From Guillardia theta CCMP2712 (Eukaryota > Protista > Cryptophyta): a DNA stretch of 64,000 bases. The position numbers were made by a program, and so were the translations under genes. This document shows, piece after piece, positions 54,976-63,664 of this stretch; the stretch's first letter is position 1; each line of letters starts with the position of its first letter. Location of the stretch: the NCBI RefSeq assembly GCF_000315625.1, contig NW_005434668.1, forward strand, positions 623,523-687,522, given 5' to 3'. A model generated the notes under the pieces. It worked only from the letters and a program-made list of their open reading frames with translations, did no database searches and was not told the DNA's origin.

Positions 54976-56661
54976 TCAAAGGTCCTTGGTTTCTTCTACA
55001 TATTGCATGCCGACGGCCTCAAGAGCATCGCGAAAGTGATCAGGGATGGGAGCGACGACCTTGAGGTCGTGTTGACTTAACGGATGTCTGCCACCGATCA
55101 AGTAAGCGAGCAGCAATCTTCAAGCATGGGATGCACGTGAACTGAAGGCTCCGGGCGTGAAGCTTCAAGGGAGTGCGAAACTTTTCAGCATCGAAGTGCT
55201 TAAGGGAGCTGAAGTCAAATCAGCCTCCTCACGTCCTCCCCCTCGTTCATGTCCTCATCAGCATCTCCTTGCTTTTCTCGTCTCCTTGTCCTCTTCTGCT
55301 ACTGCTTTCCCTTCCTCACGCTTCTCACCTGGACTCCTTCAGTTCCTCGTCGCTCGCAGTGTAGAGCTCTGCCTCCTTCCCGTATACGTTGTCTCCAACA
55401 ATCGGAAGGCCGGCGTGCATTGCATGGATGCGAATCTGATGAGTTCTGTCGTGCAGACGCACAAGGTGAGTCGAGGAACAAGCGAGAGGATCAGTAGTGA
55501 AATGAAGTTGAAGAGGAGGGCTCAAGGAGAACCTTCCTGTCTTTGGCAAGGCTCGCAGAAGCGTCATGCTCTGCGTTCTTGACCTCCCAAGAACCTCGAA
55601 TCGTGTTTCAGAAGGTTTTCCCTGTGTGATTGTTAGGGCCCTGGGTATGGGGCTGAAAGCTTTCAACAGCAACGGCGTCAGTCTCACGTCTGGAGAGACG
55701 CATCGGAGGAGCTTGCGGTGAGGATGAAAGTCTATCGCTGCATTCACCACGAAGGCGTCTACTTCCCTGCCATCACAGCTGGTCATCGCAGCCTCCGATC
55801 TCACTCAACACTCTCACGGTGAAGAACCATCCACGAGGCAAAAGTACTCTTTGACCACCTTCCTCTCTCGGAAGATCTCATGCATCAGGGGCACCTTGCA
55901 ACGAAAAGCGTGTAGTCAGCCGTCAAAGACCAGGGGAAGCGCGGGAGGTCACCATTCGCTGCTCTTTGGCATAGACGACAACTCCCGACGTCCACATGTC
56001 CAACCTGTGTATGACAAAAGGAGTCTTTCCGAGGTGTCCGATCACACGGTTGAGCAGAGTCCCAGACAAGAATCTGTGCGGCGGATTCATCTGCATGCCG
56101 GGAGGCTTTGAGACGAAGATGAGGTCGTCGTCTTCGTACAAGACTTGCAAGGGACCATGATCAGCTTGCAGCCTACCCGGGCATTCAGAACCATCAAGTC
56201 TCAACAAGGGGGACCTACGGAATCGTCTTGGAAAGTGCCTTATAATCCTGCAGCATGAAATCACTTGCGGGGCTTCTCTGACCGCAACTTACCACAGTCC
56301 CGTCAGGCTGGGTGAATTGTTTGAGAAGTTGGGGTGAGATGAAGGACTGAGCTATCCTCTTCTCGTCATCTGTGAGCGGCTTTGGTGTTGAACTCTTCCT
56401 TGGTTGTTCGCCTTCTCCCATGTCCAATGCCTTTCCTGTCAGTCTCCGACAAACAGTTTTCTGCCGAACATCTCTGATCTCACGAAAGCAAGGAGATTTG
56501 GGAAGAGCAGAGCAAGGCGAAGTGAAGAGAGGAGAGATGAACGAGCACGAGGAGAGTAGAGGAGAGGATAGTGAGCATGAGGAGAGGAGAGGAGAGGAGA
56601 GCGAGCATGACGAGCCTCCAACGAGCACGAGCGGAAGCATTTTCCAAGGCAGTTTCGGCAT
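54976..56661 (-). CDS. RluA/RluD-family RNA pseudouridine synthase with organelle-targeting-like presequence
   Basis: VLYEDDDLIFVSKPPG, IHRLDMWTSG (catalytic Asp), KEYFCLV, GKPSETRFEVL, RTHQIRIH..GLPIVGDNVYG and LKLHA. Hydrophobic plus Ser-rich N-terminal extension. Confidence 0.9.
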
Positions 56662-56762
56662 GAGGCCGCAATTCAGTCGTTAGAATCCGTTACATTTTGA
56701 CTGGAAGGGGTGTGTATTATTGGGACAGGTAGGGGTAGTAGGGGCCGTCCTGAACGAGAACG
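56662..56762. promoter_or_regulatory. Compact bidirectional promoter region with GGGGT(A) motifs
   Basis: About 100 bp between the divergent RluA and CCA start codons, containing aaggggtgtg and ggtaggggtagtaggggcc. Confidence 0.5.
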
Positions 56763-59700
56763 ATGCGGCGGAGAGCGTGGGCGATGACGGTGGCGATGAT
56801 GCTGATCAGACGGCTGGAAGGAGGAGGAGGAGGAGGAGGAGGAGGACGAGGGCCCTTGCACCTCTCTTCCTTACCGCCATCCCTCTCCTCCCTCTCCTCC
56901 CTCTCCCCCGCTGGTTTTGTTGGGCCTGCAGCGCCATTGTTCGCAATGAGCACGGTGGGGCATGCCTTGCTCCGAGGAAGAATGCGCCTTAGCGGAGGAA
57001 GCGAAGAATCAGACAAGACAACCATGAGAAAGAAACGGACGAGGGAGGAGATGCTTTCCCCTCAGCTGCCCTCCTCTCGAAGAGCACTCTCCCTCTCATC
57101 CTTCTCTACATCGTCGCCAGGGCCTGAACAAAGTGCTGATTTTCATCCAGAAACAGGACTTCAAGGAGAGGAGCTCCCCCCTCTGCTCGCGGCATGGGTA
57201 GACAGGCTCCCTCAAGATCTTCTTGAAGTGCTCAGGGTGATCGAGGAGGAAGGAGGTGGACGGGTTTGGCTTGTGGGAGGCTGCATACGGGACTGCCTCG
57301 CAGGCCTCATGCCTTGGGAGATCGACTTGGCGACGACCCTGGAGCCTTCGGAGATGCTTCGCCTCTTCCCTCGAGCTCTCGACACGGGCAGCCAGTACGG
57401 CACAGTGACGATTAGAAAGGGAGGAGTCAGCGTGGAAGCGACCACGTACGTTGTTTGACTGACGGCCCTAAATGATGAACCCCAAACTTGTTCTTGTCTA
57501 TGTCCAGTCCATCGTGTCACTTACGACATGCTCGTTCAGGCTGCGAGCTGACGGGACTTACGGTGACGGACGTCGACCAGAGACAGTGACCTTCGGGCGA
57601 TCCCTGAAAGAAGACCTGTGACACTCCCTCATCCCCAACCATCCTTGTCCTTTCCCTTCCTCTTCCTTTCTCTCTTCTTCTCTCTCCCTCCTCCCTCCAT
57701 CATATTCTTCCTCTTTTTCATTTCCGATCACTCCTCCTTCCCTTCTCTACCTGCTCGTTCCCCCAGCCCATTCGTTTCTATTCCTTCTCCTGTCTTGTTT
57801 TTTGACAATTTCTCCTTCTCTACCTCCTCTCACCAACTCCGTATTCGCCTTTCAAATTTTTTGCATTCGTTTTTCTTCCTCTTCCTCTGCTTTCACAGTA
57901 TCAGCAAGCAATTTTTGCCTCCATTCCTCCCTCGATCACCGAGTCATGCTCTTGCTGCCTCGGATCCTCTTACCCTTGTTTTCAGGCTACGCCGAGACTT
58001 CACTATCAATGCGATGGCGGTCGATGTGGGGCGGAGGAAGCTATTTGACCCGTGGGGGGGGCAGGTGCTTCTCGCGCCCGCTCGCACTCGATCTCATCCT
58101 CCTTCAGCACGATGTGAAGCAGAGTATTCTCCGAGCTGTCGGGGATGCCAAGGAAAGGCTGCGAGAGGATGGGCTTCGAGCAATGCGAGCATATCGGTGA
58201 GCTGCTGCAGGTGTGATGGAGGAGGCGGACAGAAGCTGAGCCGCCGCAGGTTCATGGACGGCAAGTCCGGGCAGAGACACGCGGACGAGTCGCTGCGAGT
58301 AGCTCTAAGAGGATCGTCCAAGCTGCTGGCTCGCGTCTCCAAGGAGAGAATCTGGACTGAATTCTCAAAGATCCTCGCGGGCCCTCGAGCCCCGCTCGTC
58401 GTTAGGAGGATGGCAGAGGATGAAGTCCTCAGCTCCGTGACGCTGCTCCCTGTCTCTCCGCGCGGCCTTCGTGCCCTGGAGTGTCTTAGCTGCAAGGACC
58501 TGCCCCTCTGGGCTGAGCAAGCGACGGAGATGGAGAGCTCGCACAAGGTTCAGGTCGCTCAGTATGACAAGCAGCTGACGGGAAGGCAGTCGTACAAGGA
58601 AGATGTTCTGATGAACCCCAAGCCTCCCAAGAAGCCTCAGGTCACGTGAGCACATGACGATGCCAGCTGACGACGCCAGCAGCCTCACTCGCACTACGCC
58701 TTCATCGACTTTGAGGCGACGTGCGACGATAGGAGAGGTGAAGTTGGGGTAATTGAGTGGATAAAGAGAGTGGGGCAGAAAGCAAGGAGGAGGGAGGAGG
58801 GAGGAGGGAGGAGGGAGGAGGGAGGAGGGAGGAGGGAGGAGGGAGGAGGGAGGAGGGAGGAGGGAGGAGGGAGGAGAGGTCTGCGAGGGCTTGTGTGTGC
58901 AAGGAGAAGGAAGCTGAGGCCATGCCAGGCTTCTCGCCCTCAGAGATCATCGAATTCCCCGTCGTCCTCGTTGAGTCCGCCTCGGGAAAGGTCTGTGAGG
59001 GCAAGTAGGAAGAAAACCCAGCTGAGTTCGAGCAGGTTGTGTCTGAATTTCACAGCTTTGTGAGACCGCGAGTTCATCCGTTCTTGACTGATTTCTGCCA
59101 AGAACTCACCGGCATCAAGCAGAAAGATGTCCTCTTTCTTCTTTTCTTGCTCTCATGCTCTCTCCTCGATCTGCCTTCGTCTCTTGTCTTCAATCGTCTC
59201 TCCTCCCCTATCTTCGCCTCGCGTTCTCTTCTCTCCTCTGCTCATCTCCTCTTCCCTGATACATCTACTTGTGCCTTTCCTCTATCATATCCTCCCCCAT
59301 GTTGTTCTCATAGGTGGTCAGGTCGACTCGGCCCCGGAGTTCAAGGAAGTTCTTGCCAACATGCTGGTCTGCTCGTTTCGCTTGATCGTGTGCTCAGCTA
59401 CTGCAGGACTGGTTGGCTGAGCTGGGGCTGCCGGAGGGGTCGGTCATGTTTGCAACTGATGGCGACTGGGACCTTCGCTCGATGCTGCCCAGGCAGTGCG
59501 AGCTGGCGGAGGTGCCGCAGCCTGTGGCCCTTCAGCGTTGGGTTGACATCCGGCGAGTCTTCTCCGAGACCCTTAAGACTGGAAACAAGGTGAACAGCAG
59601 CTGGGGAAAGAGAAGTGGAAGTGACTTGCCGGGGAAGGGGCTGATGAGCATGTGCCAAGCGCTGGGAATCAACTTCGTCGGGCAGGTGGGGGGGTGAGGG

Positions 59701-61243
59701 GCAGCTGGAAGTTGAGGTGGACGGGAGCTGAATGAGGAAGGGGGGAAAGGGATTGAATGAGGAAGGGGGGAAAGGGATTGAATGAGGAAGGGAGGAAAGG
59801 GATTGAATGGACAGGCTCAGGCTCACTCGGGGATCTGCGACGCTCGAAACATCGCAAGAGTAGGTCTGGTGCTTATGCAGGTGAGGAGGAGGAGGAGAAT
59901 GAGGGGAAGGAGAACGAGAAGGAGGAGAAGGAGAACGAGAAGGAGGAGAAGGAGAAGGAGGAGAAGGAGTGTGGTTGGTGTGTTGGGGGGAAGCTGTCAA
60001 GAGCAGTACAGAGGCTCAAGAGGTCCGAGGGAAAGAGGGGGAAGGAAGCAATCTGATATGAAAGATGAGAAGATGGAAGTGAAGCAGAGGCGAGAGGAGA
60101 TGAGGGCAGCAGAGGGAGTGAGAGAATGTGTTTTCTTACTGCGAGATAGGAGCATGATGCCGTACTTTCGTCCAACAGTCAGATCAAGGGTGACCCTCAT
60201 GCTCTTCCCTCCTCCTCTGCGTCTCTGCCGCCTCCTCGTCCTCGTCCCCTTGCCTATTTCCTCACTCACTTGCGACTAGAACTAGACTCCAGCAGGAAGG
60301 AGCAGACGGTGGAGGAGGCCGGTGAGACTGGTGAGGCTTCAATGATATCCGCTTGGTCTGACGACAAGAAGCGACCTACGATGAGCAGCGAGAAAGCTCG
60401 ATCTGCGCGCGCATGTCACTCCTGGTTGCACATGTGAGGAGCTGATGTTTCCCTCAGCTTCGTCTTGTTGTCTCATGCTAGTCCAGGTGGGCTTTGCCGA
60501 GCTTGAAGACGCTCTTCGTAGGATGAAGCTGTGGGGAGCAATTCTCTTCCTCCTCCTCTGAGCGTTTGTCAGGTCGCGAGACGAGATGAGGAGAGTCAGG
60601 ACGCACGTGAAGCTCCTCGGCTTCTTGCCGCATCCTCGCAGCCCAGGAGAACTTCGTCGCTACCGTGCTATTCTCGGCTCTCAGCTCGTCAAGATCCAAG
60701 TACAGTCTACGTCCTCTTCCTCTTCCTCTTCCTCTTCTCCCTGCGTGGTGACACCCGTCCAGTTAAAGTTGGAAGCCGCTTGGGCAGCAGCAGATGAAAG
60801 CGAGGAGAAGGAGAAGAAGATGGTGAGTGGAGGAGCAGGCTTCCTCGACTGATGCTTGCTCAGCGACTAGTGGAAGACGTGGAGCGTGAACTCTCAGCTC
60901 TGCCTCCTCTCAAGGCTCCCAACAGTCCACAGCCTCTTGTCTCAGGTTAACCTCCCCTGCAAGAGCCCAGCTCAACCTCAGCAGGAACGTGGCTGATGAA
61001 GGTGGGGGGAGTCGCTCCTGGGCCACTGGTGGGTCGTCTGAAGGATTATCTTCATTACTGCCAGGTCCTCGTCCCCCCCCCTCCTCTTGTCTCAAGTTCC
61101 ATCAGGTCGATCAAGACCTCGAGACTCCCGAGCAGGTCCAGCAAGTCTTCCACGACATCGAGCTGCTCGCCCGCGACATGGATCAGCTCTCCTACTCTGC
61201 GCACTTGGAAGGCCTTCCGCGCCTCCAGTGGCCACCAGCGTGA
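56763..61243 (+). CDS. Class II CCA-adding tRNA nucleotidyltransferase with an internal ERI1-type DEDDh 3'-5' exonuclease domain
   Basis: Head: VGGCIRDCL..EIDLAT, VEATT|LRADGTYGDGRRP, RRDFTINAMA, EDGLRAMRAYR|F, VSKERIWTEFSKIL. Exonuclease (58683 to about 60190): IDFEATC, EIIEFP, FHSFVRP..LTDFCQELTGIKQ, TDGDWDL, HSGICDARNIA. CCA body and tail resume: RRMKLSRDEMRRV, PLVSGTWLMKVGGVAPGPLVGRLKDYL...LPRLQWPPA*. Confidence 0.8.
58785..58878. repeat. Intronic (GGAGGAG)n purine repeat
   Basis: Directly visible. Similar GA/CT tracts occur in other introns at about 59730-59810, 59885-59970 and 61960-62085. Confidence 0.85.
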
Positions 61244-61258
61244 GCTGCCCGACCTCCT

Positions 61259-61389
61259 CTAGTCCGACCCGAAGAGAAGAGAAGCCGCGAGCTCCGGGTT
61301 GCCGTTGGTTCCTCGCAGAGCTGCTTTAGCTTGATCGCGCGTGAACCCCATGTCTACCAAGCTCTGAATAGCTGACTCCGGAAACTCAT

Positions 61390-61430
<41 letters not shown>

Positions 61431-62042
61431 CCCGCTGCTCCTTGGCCAACCACGCCTGCGCACGATGATCATGTAAAAGCGAACTTGAGGCAGCGAGACC
61501 TTGCTGCTTGTCCTCCATCTCGACGTCTTGTCCCGCTTCTTCGATGCGGAGGTGCTTCGGGATATCACCCTCTCCCAGGAAGCTGCACGTGACAGCAACG
61601 AGGTGTCAGGATTTGCTAGACTTCGAGGAAGTAGGAGAAAAGAGAGGTAGTAGAAGAGAGAAGTAGGAGGAGAACGGCTCACGGGACTGAGCAGGCGTCG
61701 CAGGAGAGAACATTGTTCTTGAGGTCGATGCACATCTTTCATAGATCAGCTCAAGTCACTTCGCCTGCGTCTCACCTGATGTCTCCGCAGGTTGTCAAGT
61801 CCAAAGAGAAACTCCATCGACTGATCCTCCAGCACTGTGATGGAGATGGTGATGAACATGTCCCCGAGTTTCATTCCTGCCGCATGTACACGGCCGATGA
61901 TCTTCGAGGTCCCAACTCCCTTCGCTACCCCCGCATATCCTGCGACCACTCGTCACTTCCCTCCTGCTCTCCCTCTCCTGCCTGTCTCTCCTGCTCTCCC
62001 TCTCCTGCCGGTCTCTCCTGCTCTCCCTCTCCTGCCTGTCTC

Positions 62043-62086
<44 letters not shown>

Positions 62087-63664
62087 TCCTTTCCTCCCAA
62101 TCTCTCTTACGGTAGTCGATGAGGCGCATCAAACCCAGGCGTTCGGCGCAGGGCTGCACGAGGGTGAGGCACGAGGGAGAGAGGCGAAGGAGGCAGAGCA
62201 AAGGCATAAGCACAAGACTGAGACGCGAACCTTTGACATGATAGTGCTCTGAGCGCCGCTATCCACAAACGCCTTGACTGGTCTCTACGAGACAATGTGA
62301 GAGAGGAGGAGGAAAGAGGAGGGAGGAGGGAGGAGGGAGGAAGCATTCAAGAAAGGTGGGGAAGTTGAGTACCCCATTGACTTCGCAGTCTACGTACAGC
62401 ATGACAACGCGCCCGAAGGCCTCTGGGTTGAACTCCATAGCCTGCTCGAGGTTTTGATTGACATTCTCCATGCGGATCGCTTCCTCAATCTCTTTCTGCA
62501 TTTCACAGCAGCTCAGGATCAACACGATGCGATTGGGTGGGAGGAGGAAGGGAGAATCACAGATGACGTGGGAAAGCAAGGGAAAGGTCCACCTGAGCCT
62601 CCACATCGAACGGGTCAGCGTTGAGTCGCATGATGGCTGCGGCTTTCTTCCTCTCGTTCTCCATCTTCTCCTTGTAGATTCCCGCGAGGGTCTGAGTGAC
62701 CTGCGGCAGACACACTCAGCTCGGGTGTGAGCAGGGAGAGCAGAAGAGACTCGGTCAACGTCGCCAGCAGCCAGGCTCTCTCCTAGTTCCCGGTTGTTCT
62801 CTTGCACGCGGCTGAGCAAGCGAGGATCCTGTGCGACAGTCGCCAGCAGTTGCTGGGCCTCATTTCGAAAGCGCTGAAGCGGATCCATGCTTCCAAGAAT
62901 CTGCTGCAGCATGCTTCTCTGTGAAATCGGTCCGGATGCTCGCGTGCGTCGGAGCATGAGCATGTCGTAGTTCTGGACGGAGGCCTGACGAAGCGACAGG
63001 CTGTTGACCAACGACTTACCCTCTCGCAGCAAGTCCTGCTCTCTAAGGGGCACACCGAACTCAACTTCAAGAACCGCCTTGACGTTCTCAACCGTCTCCT
63101 CGTGCTCAACTTCGATGCTTCGAACTTCTCCCTGTTCGTCTGTGACGCTCACGGTGATCGTCGCTCCCATTCCCGCACTCGACGGGGGCAAGTCAGCCGG
63201 TGCTGCTGGCTGGCTGGCTGGCTGGCTGGGAGGAGGAGGAGCTTGGCACGAGTTGCCTACCGAATCCTGACAAGAGAATCGTCTGTCAAAGATGATGGAG
63301 GAGTGAAGTAACGAAGAACGAGCGCCAAGGAAAAGGACAGAGGAAGAGGGCGGCAGACCAGGAAGGGAATGGGTATAAAGCATGGGCATGGGCATGGGCA
63401 TGATAGTGAGGGAACAGGTGACGTCACCGTTTTGGCCTTTGACTTCATTGCAACTACAGTAGCACCATCTGCAATGCCCAGCTCGTCAATGCGCTTCGAG
63501 TCATCAGACAAGATTTGCCCCTTGAAGATCAGCATCGTTATCGTCCCCTGCTGATCAGCTGGAAGCAAACGAGAAGCTTCTTGCCGGAGATCCCCAACCA
63601 CAGCAGAGGGAGCAAGCTCAACATCGAACTGCTCTTTGGAAACAGTCCTCAAGCTCACCCTCAT
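61259..63664 (-). CDS. DDI1: DNA-damage-inducible 1 (UBL-HDD-retroviral protease-UBA) with an extra N-terminal UBL
   Basis: [19 protein letters not shown]|[17 protein letters not shown] (aspartyl protease D-S-G), [31 protein letters not shown], and [40 protein letters not shown]. Confidence 0.9.

What the first reader, a model, noticed from the sequence alone, without database searches (positions are those of the whole stretch)
56763..61243. CCA-adding enzyme with an intact ERI1-type DEDDh exonuclease inserted: candidate single-chain tRNA 3'-trim-and-add enzyme
Seen: the nucleotidyltransferase head and neck motifs are complete (ExD carboxylates in EIDLAT, RRDFTINA, templating EDGLR, full flexible loop Y.DGRRP). 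A phase-0 intron (58641-58682) leads in frame into an ERI1/3'hExo-family domain with all five DEDDh residues (DFE, DWD, HSGICD). The CCA body and tail then resume (MKLSRDEMRRV; LMKVGGVAPGPLVGRLK). Established: some bacterial class II CCA enzymes carry an HD phosphatase downstream of the catalytic core for tRNA end repair, and DEDDh nucleases such as RNase T and ERI1 trim single-stranded 3' overhangs next to stems. Inference: this protein couples 3' trailer trimming, or removal of damaged CCA ends, to CCA addition. I do not know a characterised enzyme with this architecture.
Basis: partly seen in the sequence, partly recalled or inferred. Interest (0 to 1): 0.92.

Follow-up and report, generated by a model that had tools for sequence, protein, structure and literature searches.

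The report
CCA-adding enzyme with built-in exonuclease
The alga Guillardia theta makes one 835-residue protein in which the enzyme that builds the CCA end of tRNAs carries an intact 3'-5' RNA exonuclease inserted in its middle; the same design is conserved in other algae and I found no paper on it, so it is a candidate single-chain trim-and-rebuild enzyme for tRNA ends, but no activity has been tested.

Summary
Intron-free RNA-seq contigs from three studies run from about 56860 to 61381. They join the CCA-enzyme head and neck exons, the exonuclease exons and the CCA body and tail exons into one frame: ATG 56763, stop 61243, 22 exons, 835 aa.

All class II motifs are present, and so are all five DEDDh residues. 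The public gene model (XP_005840326.1, 638 aa) is wrong: it lacks motif A's GGxxRD box and motifs B and C. A UniRef transcript fragment matches my model 100% over aa 88-511.

The architecture is a conserved family. At least 20 sequence clusters carry it, including Mesostigma viride, Botryococcus braunii and uncultured aquatic eukaryotes. In three of these it is one uninterrupted ORF. Both catalytic sets are conserved.

An AlphaFold model of one ortholog (pLDDT 90.8, pTM 0.88) superposes on the whole Bacillus CCA enzyme, with an ERI3-like domain inserted at the neck/body junction. The nearest prokaryotic relatives are bacterial-type CCA enzymes of marine group II archaea. G. theta also has a canonical eukaryotic CCA1 gene, so this enzyme is a second, specialised one.

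The trim-and-add function remains inference. The scan had already noted, on this same stretch, that this enzyme looks prokaryote-derived.

The parts
56763..61243 (+). Whole coding region: 22 exons, 21 GT..AG introns of 39-368 nt, 835 codons plus stop.
   Evidence: RNA contig joints. Splice-site check. Length-constrained search for the joints not shown. Open spliced frame. 100% identity of aa 88-511 to the transcript-derived UniRef entry P0326.
56763..57212 (+). N-terminal leader, aa 1-150. It holds an Arg-rich hydrophobic start (MRRRAWAMTVAMMLIRRL), a poly-Gly run encoded by a GGA repeat, a Ser/Pro-rich stretch and a conserved basic patch (MRKKRTREE, aa 88-96). It is a possible targeting signal; the compartment is unresolved.
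   Evidence: Translation. Comparison of N-termini among relatives. The UniRef fragment starts at M88.
57213..58155 (+). Nucleotidyltransferase head (aa 151-296, 4 exons): motif A (GGCIRD, EIDLAT), flexible loop (YGDGRRP), motif B (RRDFTINA), motif C (DPWGGQHD).
   Evidence: Pfam PolyA_pol. Motif coordinates. Family conservation.
58156..58505 (+). Neck (aa 297-395): templating motif D (EDGLRAMRAYRF) and motif E (SKERIWTEF).
   Evidence: Pfam PolyA_pol_RNAbd 1.6e-8. D and R of motif D are invariant in the family.
58641..58682 (+). The 42-nt phase-0 intron that joins the CCA-enzyme part to the first exonuclease exon.
   Evidence: The joint is seen in contigs of X1, X3 and X4. GT..AG ends. Phase 0.
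58683..60155 (+). [quoted passage not shown] Catalytic residues are D435 and E437 (DFEATC), D533 (DWD), and H590 and D595 (HSGICD).
   Evidence: Pfam RNase_T on window pieces and on P0113. Alignment with orthologs. Ortholog matches to ERI3 and ERI1 structures.
60407..61240 (+). CCA-enzyme body and tail (aa 651-835). ARMSLLVAHV stands where HD-type relatives have LRLAALLHD. Also holds MKLSRDEMRRV and the tail motif GVAPGPLVGRLK.
   Evidence: Alignment to unfused relatives. Pfam tRNA_NucTran2_2, weak (21.8 bits, cut-off 27), on P0113 and on the Botryococcus protein P0297. The ortholog model superposes on the whole of 1MIV.

Best explanation
SHOWN. The stretch is one nuclear gene of Guillardia theta. 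Its spliced mRNA encodes a single 835-aa protein in this order:
- a 150-aa leader;
- the head and neck of a bacterial-type class II CCA-adding enzyme, with all motifs A-E and the full flexible loop;
- an ERI1/ERI3-like DEDDh 3'-5' exonuclease domain with all five catalytic residues, inserted at the neck/body junction;
- the CCA-enzyme body and tail.
The design is a conserved algal protein family under selection for both catalytic centres. It exists beside a canonical eukaryotic CCA1-type enzyme.

INFERRED.
- The tail and body hold a tRNA, or a tRNA-like acceptor stem, by its elbow, as in other class II enzymes.
- The single-stranded 3' end can then reach either the polymerase pocket or the nuclease pocket.
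- The nuclease trims 3' trailers, or damaged, incomplete or wrongly extended ends, back towards the acceptor stem. This is what ERI1-type nucleases do next to duplexes.
- The polymerase rebuilds CCA.
- The result would be a one-chain 3'-end maturation, repair or proofreading enzyme.
For: One mRNA:
- Spliced contigs of 2561 and 2621 nt from two studies, and three pieces from a third, cover 56860-61381 with all introns removed, including the CCA-to-nuclease joint.
- The frame is open for 835 codons.
- An independent transcript-derived UniRef entry is 100% identical over aa 88-511, so it spans the head into the nuclease.

Conserved family:
- PolyA_pol + PolyA_pol_RNAbd + RNase_T occur in the same order in P0004, P0005, P0009, P0017, P0029-P0031, P0040, P0043, P0048 (Mesostigma), P0137-P0144, P0297 (Botryococcus), P0328 and P0329.
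- P0137 (805 aa) and P0017 (749 aa) are uninterrupted ORFs on contigs of 1.3 Mb and 0.73 Mb.

Both centres kept:
- Motifs A-E and DEDDh are conserved in 15 of 17 fused members.

CCA-type rather than poly(A) polymerase type:
- The best NCBIfam hit is NF009814, CCA tRNA nucleotidyltransferase: 153-191 bits against 97-124 bits for PcnB.
- The best PDB sequence hit is the B. stearothermophilus CCA enzyme at 5e-36, against E. coli PAP at 3e-21.
- The AlphaFold model of P0043 (pLDDT 90.8, pTM 0.88) aligns to the whole of 1MIV with TMt 0.74 across the insert. It aligns to PAP over head and neck only.

Nuclease type:
- ERI3 at 1e-31 and TMt 0.88; ERI1/3'hExo at 1e-24.

Insert position:
- The insert lies between PolyA_pol_RNAbd and position 12-14 of tRNA_NucTran2_2.
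- It sits just before the helix that carries the HD motif in the nearest bacterial relatives.
Against: - No activity, substrate or location data exist.
- Motif A reads ExD rather than the canonical DxD in G. theta and in 13 of the other 15 fused relatives that reach this motif. Polymerase chemistry may therefore be altered.
- A nuclease and a polymerase on the same 3' end would run a futile cycle unless they are gated, and I cannot show any gating.
- Three members of the same clade lack the insert (P0039, P0045, P0042), so the nuclease is dispensable in some lineages.
- The cell has a canonical CCA1-type gene, so bulk CCA addition probably does not need this protein.
- Minor isoforms that skip the nuclease exons cannot be excluded, because 8 joints were not listed.
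Confidence: 0.5

Rival explanations
1. Tag-and-degrade enzyme. The nucleotidyltransferase adds a destabilising tail (A, a poly(A)-like tail or CCACCA) to defective tRNAs or other organellar or nuclear RNAs. The fused exonuclease then degrades them from the 3' end. This would be a one-chain analogue of TRAMP-exosome or of bacterial PAP with 3' exonucleases.
For: - Class II enzymes of this fold include poly(A) polymerases. PcnB models score 97-124 bits on the head and neck.
- Green algae have several organelle-predicted class II nucleotidyltransferases of unknown specificity (PMC5727444).
- Some family members (P0017, P0040) have a degenerate flexible loop and motif B, so specificity may vary.
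Against: - Body and tail resemble tRNA-measuring CCA enzymes, not PAP. CCA models outscore PcnB.
- From established knowledge, ERI1-type nucleases are distributive end-trimmers that stop near duplexes. They are not processive degraders.
Confidence: 0.2
2. The CCA-enzyme scaffold is mainly an RNA-binding platform for the nuclease. The true substrate would be another structured RNA 3' end, such as an rRNA 3' end, a histone-type stem-loop or a tRNA-like element, and polymerase activity would be weak or lost.
For: - ExD replaces DxD in motif A in most members.
- ERI1 relatives process 5.8S rRNA and histone mRNA ends (established knowledge).
- An earlier scan note reports tRNA-like elements after G. 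theta histone genes (s1-431589, unchecked).
Against: - Every other polymerase motif is conserved across the family, including the templating D and R of motif D and the flexible loop. That is not expected for a dead domain.
- Glu is still a metal-binding carboxylate.
Confidence: 0.12
3. Dedicated proofreading. The nuclease removes nucleotides wrongly added by the polymerase site of the same chain, as the inserted DEDDh domain of PolC-type DNA polymerases does. It would have no role in trailer trimming.
For: - The high pTM of the ortholog model (0.88) suggests a fixed domain arrangement.
- The nuclease region also gives weaker matches to PolC exonuclease models.
Against: - From established knowledge, class II CCA enzymes are already accurate without a nuclease.
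- There is no evidence on the geometry of the two sites.
Confidence: 0.1
4. Not a fusion. Either there are two adjacent or nested genes, or the apparent fusion is an assembly or annotation artefact, or the exonuclease exons are normally spliced out.
For: - The public model of this gene is badly wrong.
- Three clade members lack the insert.
- 8 joints were not displayed.
Against: - Direct splice joints link the CCA and nuclease exons in three studies.
- A transcript-derived UniRef fragment spans both parts.
- Relatives carry the same order in uninterrupted single ORFs.
Confidence: 0.03

Closest known systems
Bacillus-type class II CCA-adding enzyme (B. stearothermophilus, PDB 1MIV; NCBIfam NF009814)
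   Same: - Head, neck, body and tail are all present.
- It is the best sequence match (5e-36) and the best whole-chain fold match (TMt 0.74) for ortholog P0043.
- Motifs A-E, the flexible loop and the tail GxxPGxxxG motif are present.
   Different: - A ~180-aa exonuclease domain plus two linkers is inserted at the neck/body junction.
- Motif A reads ExD.
- There is a long N-terminal leader.
- NF009814's full-length cut-off is not reached, because only the N-terminal half aligns contiguously.
CCA tRNA nucleotidyltransferases of marine group II archaea (Poseidoniaceae/Thalassarchaeaceae MAGs; P0011, P0015, P0032, P0330, P0332)
   Same: - They are the nearest prokaryotic relatives in the tree.
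- They share the distinctive tail ending (LGxLKxWLxRxQVE...W..P..W) and a degenerate HD site.
   Different: - They have no exonuclease insert and are ~450 aa long.
- The direction of any gene transfer is not resolved.
E. coli multifunctional CCA addition/repair protein (Cca with an HD phosphohydrolase domain)
   Same: The concept is the same: a CCA polymerase joined in one chain to a hydrolase that cleans tRNA 3' ends. The nearest bacterial relatives of this family (~455 aa) carry an HD domain in the body.
   Different: - Here the HD motif is lost (ARMSLLVAHV in place of LRLAALLHD).
- The added hydrolase is a DEDDh exonuclease, which removes whole nucleotides rather than phosphates.
ERI1/3'hExo, ERI2, ERI3 and KapD (DEDDh, Pfam RNase_T)
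   Same: - The fold matches (TMt 0.85-0.88).
- The sequence matches (1e-31 to ERI3).
- All five catalytic residues are present.
   Different: - There is no SAP domain.
- The domain is embedded inside another enzyme, which presumably supplies RNA binding.
Two-protein pathways: Rex1 or RNase T trimming followed by Cca1/Cca (yeast nucleus, E. coli end turnover)
   Same: They use the same two chemistries on the same RNA end (established knowledge).
   Different: There the two activities are separate proteins; here they are one chain.
PolC-type DNA polymerase III with an inserted DEDDh proofreading domain
   Same: A DEDDh exonuclease is inserted inside a polymerase polypeptide. The nuclease region gives weak hits to PolC exonuclease models.
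   Different: PolC is a templated DNA polymerase with an unrelated polymerase fold.

Membership tests
Class II tRNA nucleotidyltransferase (CCA-adding enzyme type) | PolyA_pol head and PolyA_pol_RNAbd neck above Pfam cut-offs | tested here: met
   PF01743 at 38.2 bits (cut-off 23) and PF12627 at 34.6 bits (cut-off 22) on window pieces. Orthologs score 86-118 bits.
Class II tRNA nucleotidyltransferase (CCA-adding enzyme type) | Motif A: GGxxRD plus the two metal-binding carboxylates DxD | tested here: inconclusive
   GGCIRD is present. The carboxylate pair reads E186-I-D188. It is ExD in 14 of the 16 fused members that reach this motif and DxD in P0017 and P0040. Both are carboxylates, but the effect on catalysis is unknown.
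Class II tRNA nucleotidyltransferase (CCA-adding enzyme type) | Motifs B (RRD), C, D (templating EDxxR) and E, and a full-length flexible loop (which CC-adding enzymes lack) | tested here: met
   RRDFTINA, DPWGGQHD, EDGLRAMRAYRF, SKERIW and YGDGRRP are all present. D and R of motif D are invariant in the family.
Class II tRNA nucleotidyltransferase (CCA-adding enzyme type) | Body and tail of CCA-enzyme type, which bind the tRNA elbow | tested here: met
   PF13735 is weak on G. theta (21.8 bits, cut-off 27) and on Botryococcus. The tail aligns motif for motif with unfused CCA enzymes. The ortholog model superposes on the whole of 1MIV (TMt 0.74), 3H38 (0.70) and TRNT1 (0.69).
Class II tRNA nucleotidyltransferase (CCA-adding enzyme type) | Adds C, C, A to tRNA 3' ends | not testable with these tools
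   This needs an enzyme assay.
ERI1-family DEDDh 3'-5' exonuclease (Pfam RNase_T) | RNase_T domain above the cut-off | tested here: met
   32.8 bits (cut-off 24) on P0113, even though that model lacks one exon. Orthologs score 55-85 bits.
ERI1-family DEDDh 3'-5' exonuclease (Pfam RNase_T) | Five catalytic residues: D, E (Exo I), D (Exo II), H-x4-D (Exo III) | tested here: met
   D435, E437, D533, H590 and D595 are present. They are conserved in 15 of 17 fused members.
ERI1-family DEDDh 3'-5' exonuclease (Pfam RNase_T) | Closest solved folds are ERI-type | tested here: met
   For ortholog P0043: ERI3 at 1e-31 and TMt 0.88; ERI1 at 1e-24.
ERI1 proper (3'hExo) | N-terminal SAP domain that binds the stem-loop | tested here: not met
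   Pfam finds no SAP domain on the window pieces or on any ortholog.
Bacterial poly(A) polymerase I (PcnB) | PcnB model above its cut-off, and a PAP-type body and leg | tested here: not met
   TIGR01942 scores 97-124 bits against a cut-off of 305 and is always below the CCA model. PAP structures align over head and neck only.
Multifunctional CCA addition/repair protein (HD-containing Cca) | Intact HD motif in the C-terminal half | tested here: not met
   ARMSLLVAHV stands where relatives have LRLAALLHDVG. There is no PF01966 hit on fused members.

The most novel reading that the evidence does not exclude
A template-independent RNA polymerase with a built-in 3'-5' editing site. The tRNA would stay anchored by its elbow on the CCA-enzyme tail while its 3' end shuttles between the inserted ERI1-type nuclease pocket and the polymerase pocket. 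One chain could then trim trailers, erase damaged or wrong ends and rebuild CCA. This would be an RNA counterpart of proofreading DNA polymerases, and it is conserved across green algae and cryptophytes.
Probability: 0.3. Interest if true: 0.8.

Novelty: new variant of a known kind. Interest (0 to 1): 0.62.

Why it matters
CCA-adding enzymes and DEDDh trimming nucleases act in turn on the same tRNA end in all cells, but as separate proteins. A conserved natural fusion with both active sites intact raises three testable points.
- Coordination: it offers a direct way to ask how trimming and rebuilding of tRNA ends are coordinated or gated.
- Quality control: it could reveal a tRNA quality-control route specific to algae, possibly in an organelle.
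- Structural study: the ortholog P0043 is compact (670 aa, no leader, confidently modelled), which suits study of 3'-end shuttling between two sites.

It also corrects a public gene model. UniProt labels the G. theta protein only as 'Exonuclease domain-containing protein', because the model lost half of the polymerase head.

Tried and rejected
- Raw RNA reads (run X18) gave only 11 reads, mostly at the 3' end. They show nothing about transcript starts, ends or strand.
- Read laying listed 15 of 23 joints. The rest had to be rebuilt from contig coordinates. The third of the last four introns (60946-60984) has an alternative (60925-60963) that fits equally by length. I chose the version that agrees with the public model's C-terminus.
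- The spliced 835-aa protein has no reference id, so it could not be sent to Pfam, the structure tools or the database tools. I used window pieces, the flawed public model P0113 and orthologs instead.
- The genome search with PF01743 on the window's own genome found only this gene and one weak motif. The second gene had to be confirmed by tblastn motif order.
- The protein-atlas search gave only unfused plant PolyA_pol clusters at score 0.80, which is not informative.
- Rfam and tRNA scans of 55000-62500 found nothing, so no RNA gene is hidden in the long introns.
- Seven literature searches found no paper on the fusion. Papers that mentioned both terms were unrelated.
- P0007, P0021 and P0090 first looked 'unfused'. 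That is an artefact. P0007 runs into intron junk before the insertion point. P0021 and P0090 are cut off inside the nuclease.
- The leader's MRLSGG (aa 74-79) resembles the LRLRGG box that earlier scan notes link to periplastid leaders, but it is not a match. I do not claim periplastid targeting.


Full report
**What is in the window**

The region lies between two minus-strand genes.
- Upstream is a divergent RluA-type pseudouridine synthase gene, with a PseudoU_synth_2 match and its start near 56661.
- Downstream is a convergent DDI1-type gene (ubiquitin, HDD, Asp_protease and UBA matches) that ends near 61259.

Six-frame translation shows class II nucleotidyltransferase, DEDDh exonuclease and CCA-tail peptides scattered over all three plus-strand frames between 56763 and 61243. 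That pattern is expected for a gene with many short introns.

**One mRNA**

I laid four public runs on 56350-61950.
- Intron-free contigs of 2561 nt (X3) and 2621 nt (X4) run from about 56860 to 61381. A third run from another study (X1) covers the same span in three pieces.
- Fifteen joints were listed, and all have GT..AG ends in the plus orientation.
- One of them is 58637>58680 (cut +3).
- Two unlisted joints are fixed uniquely by contig arithmetic: 57618-57985 and 59881-60149.

The result is 22 exons and 21 introns of 39-368 nt, with an open frame of 835 codons from ATG 56763 to the stop at 61241-61243.

A transcript-derived UniRef entry of G. theta (P0326, 441 aa, 'Poly A polymerase head domain-containing protein') is 100% identical to my model over aa 88-511. 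It therefore runs from the leader through the whole head and neck into the nuclease.

Lower-depth contigs retain the two long introns 57618-57985 and 59129-59321.

**The organism and the public model**

The genome is Guillardia theta CCMP2712 (earlier scan notes; confirmed by accession). The public protein is XP_005840326.1 / EKX53346.1 (UniRef L1JXR0, 'Exonuclease domain-containing protein', 638 aa). It is mis-modelled in several ways:
- it starts at an internal Met (MPWEIDLAT);
- it lacks GGCIRD;
- it skips the exons carrying DGRRP, RRDFTINAM and GGQ;
- it retains intron 58548-58589;
- it omits exon 59036-59128.

This explains why the polymerase half went unnoticed.

**Domain identity**

Motif positions in the protein and in the window are given.
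- Head and neck carry GGCIRD, EIDLAT, the full flexible loop YGDGRRP, RRDFTINA, DPWGGQHD, the templating EDGLRAMRAYRF and SKERIW.
- The nuclease carries D435, E437, D533, H590 and D595.
- After the nuclease come ARMSLLVAHV, MKLSRDEMRRV and the tail motif GVAPGPLVGRLK.

Pfam supports PolyA_pol, PolyA_pol_RNAbd and RNase_T. It supports tRNA_NucTran2_2 only weakly, below the cut-off.

**A conserved family**

A search of 1.84 billion representatives with a neck/body piece found many longer relatives. Pfam shows the same domain order in P0004, P0005, P0009, P0017, P0029, P0030, P0031, P0040, P0043 and P0048. Profile and single-sequence searches add P0137-P0144, P0297, P0328 and P0329.

Named sources are Mesostigma viride and Botryococcus braunii. 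The rest come from aquatic metagenomes and large eukaryote-like contigs. P0137 (805 aa) and P0017 (749 aa) are single uninterrupted ORFs on contigs of 1.3 Mb and 0.73 Mb. That excludes a splicing or annotation artefact.

Both catalytic sets are conserved in 15 of 17 fused members. The exceptions are in the nuclease motifs:
- Mesostigma has Q in place of the Exo I glutamate;
- the Botryococcus model departs at Exo II.

Separately, motif A reads ExD in 14 members and DxD in two.

**Where the insert sits**

- In unfused relatives, tRNA_NucTran2_2 starts about 40 aa after PolyA_pol_RNAbd.
- In fused proteins, RNase_T lies between these two. The tail model resumes from its position 12-14.
- Alignment puts the insert just before the helix that carries the HD motif in the nearest bacterial relatives. 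That motif is degenerate here and in the closest unfused relatives.

An AlphaFold model of the compact ortholog P0043 is confident (pLDDT 90.8, pTM 0.88). It is weak only at the two linkers that flank the nuclease. Foldseek gives these matches:
- the whole B. stearothermophilus CCA enzyme across the insert (TMt 0.74);
- ERI3 for the insert (TMt 0.88);
- E. coli poly(A) polymerase over head and neck only.

Sequence hits agree: 1MIV at 5e-36, ERI3 at 1e-31 and PAP at 3e-21. NCBIfam ranks the Bacillus-type CCA model above PcnB for every member tested.

**Evolution**

In a quick maximum-likelihood tree, all fused proteins fall in one clade of 20 rows (SH-aLRT 86). Three rows in that clade truly lack the insert: P0039, P0045 and P0042. 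At least three changes of state are needed.

The next clade holds CCA enzymes of marine group II archaea, which share the unusual tail ending. The tree was built with the quick method and has some long branches, so the finer order is not secure.

**A second CCA gene**

G. theta also has a gene at G000:C19, about 473.2-475.4 kb on the minus strand. It carries eukaryote-type motifs in the correct order: HDIDIA, RRDLTINALFYN, DDPLRALRAIRFA and SKERVYTEL. The fused enzyme is therefore an additional, specialised enzyme.

**Mechanism**

Shown: one chain, two intact and conserved catalytic centres, a retained tRNA-type body and tail, and a confident compact fold.

Inferred, from how class II CCA enzymes hold tRNA and how ERI1-type nucleases trim single-stranded 3' overhangs next to duplexes: the protein trims and rebuilds tRNA 3' ends.

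Rivals are tag-and-degrade, a nuclease working on non-tRNA ends with the CCA scaffold as a platform, and pure proofreading. None can be separated with these tools.

The compartment is unresolved.
- The G. theta leader has an Arg-rich hydrophobic start.
- One relative (P0007) has a clear signal-peptide-like start.
- Several green-lineage members seem to begin only about 55 aa before the head, at a conserved basic patch.
- The UniRef fragment starts at M88.
- Alternative starts giving differently located isoforms are possible but not shown.

**Novelty**

Seven full-text searches found no description of this architecture. The sequences are in public databases under uninformative names.

I rate it a new variant of a known kind: a conserved, uncharacterised CCA-enzyme subfamily with an inserted exonuclease.

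On this same stretch, the scan had already noted that the enzyme looks prokaryote-derived (s1-439905). My results agree.

Noticed in passing
window 56763-61243 versus public protein P0113 (XP_005840326.1): The public G. theta gene model is wrong. It uses an internal start, misses three coding exons and retains one intron. As a result UniProt sees only an exonuclease domain.
   Followed up: yes
G000:C19:473228-476290 (L003, minus strand; also L006): A second, canonical eukaryote-type CCA1/TRNT1-like gene, with motifs A-E in order. An N run sits inside the locus.
   Followed up: partly
window 55325-56661 (minus strand) and 56763 (plus strand): An RluA-type pseudouridine synthase gene starts about 100 bp from the CCA-exonuclease gene, head to head. 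The two RNA-modifying genes may share a bidirectional promoter.
   Followed up: partly
window 57318-57335 and orthologs: Motif A reads ExD instead of DxD in G. theta and in 13 of the other 15 fused relatives that reach this motif. P0017 and P0040 keep DxD.
   Followed up: partly
window 56979-57002 (aa 73-80): The leader holds RMRLSGGS. It is reminiscent of, but not equal to, the LRLRGG box that earlier scan notes link to periplastid leaders.
   Followed up: no
window 57024-57050 (aa 88-96) and N-termini of relatives: A basic patch preceded by a Met (MRKKRTREE) is conserved in position among relatives (MSRKRK, MAGKRSA, MGATKRD). A transcript-derived entry starts exactly there. It may be an alternative start or a nuclear localisation signal.
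   Followed up: partly
window 57618-57985 and 59129-59321: Two long introns are retained in lower-depth RNA contigs, at roughly a tenth to a third of the spliced depth.
   Followed up: no
window 58757-58880 (inside intron 58738-58928) and 56809-56859: GGA/GGAGG-rich tandem repeats. One lies in an intron and would read EEGGGRR repeats if translated. The other is coding and encodes a poly-Gly run in the leader. Read mapping was cut at both.
   Followed up: no
protein P0090 (relative, 547 aa): A clade member carries a Thiamine_BP (PF01910) match between the head and the neck, at a different site from the nuclease. It is cut off inside the nuclease domain.
   Followed up: no
proteins P0011, P0015, P0032, P0330, P0332: Marine group II archaea (Poseidoniaceae, Thalassarchaeaceae MAGs) carry bacterial-type class II CCA enzymes. 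These are the closest prokaryotic relatives of the algal family and share its unusual C-terminal ending.
   Followed up: partly
protein P0124 (member of the P0009 cluster): A fragment of the fused family is filed in NCBI under a Promethearchaeia (Asgard) MAG. The contig is probably eukaryotic and mis-binned.
   Followed up: no
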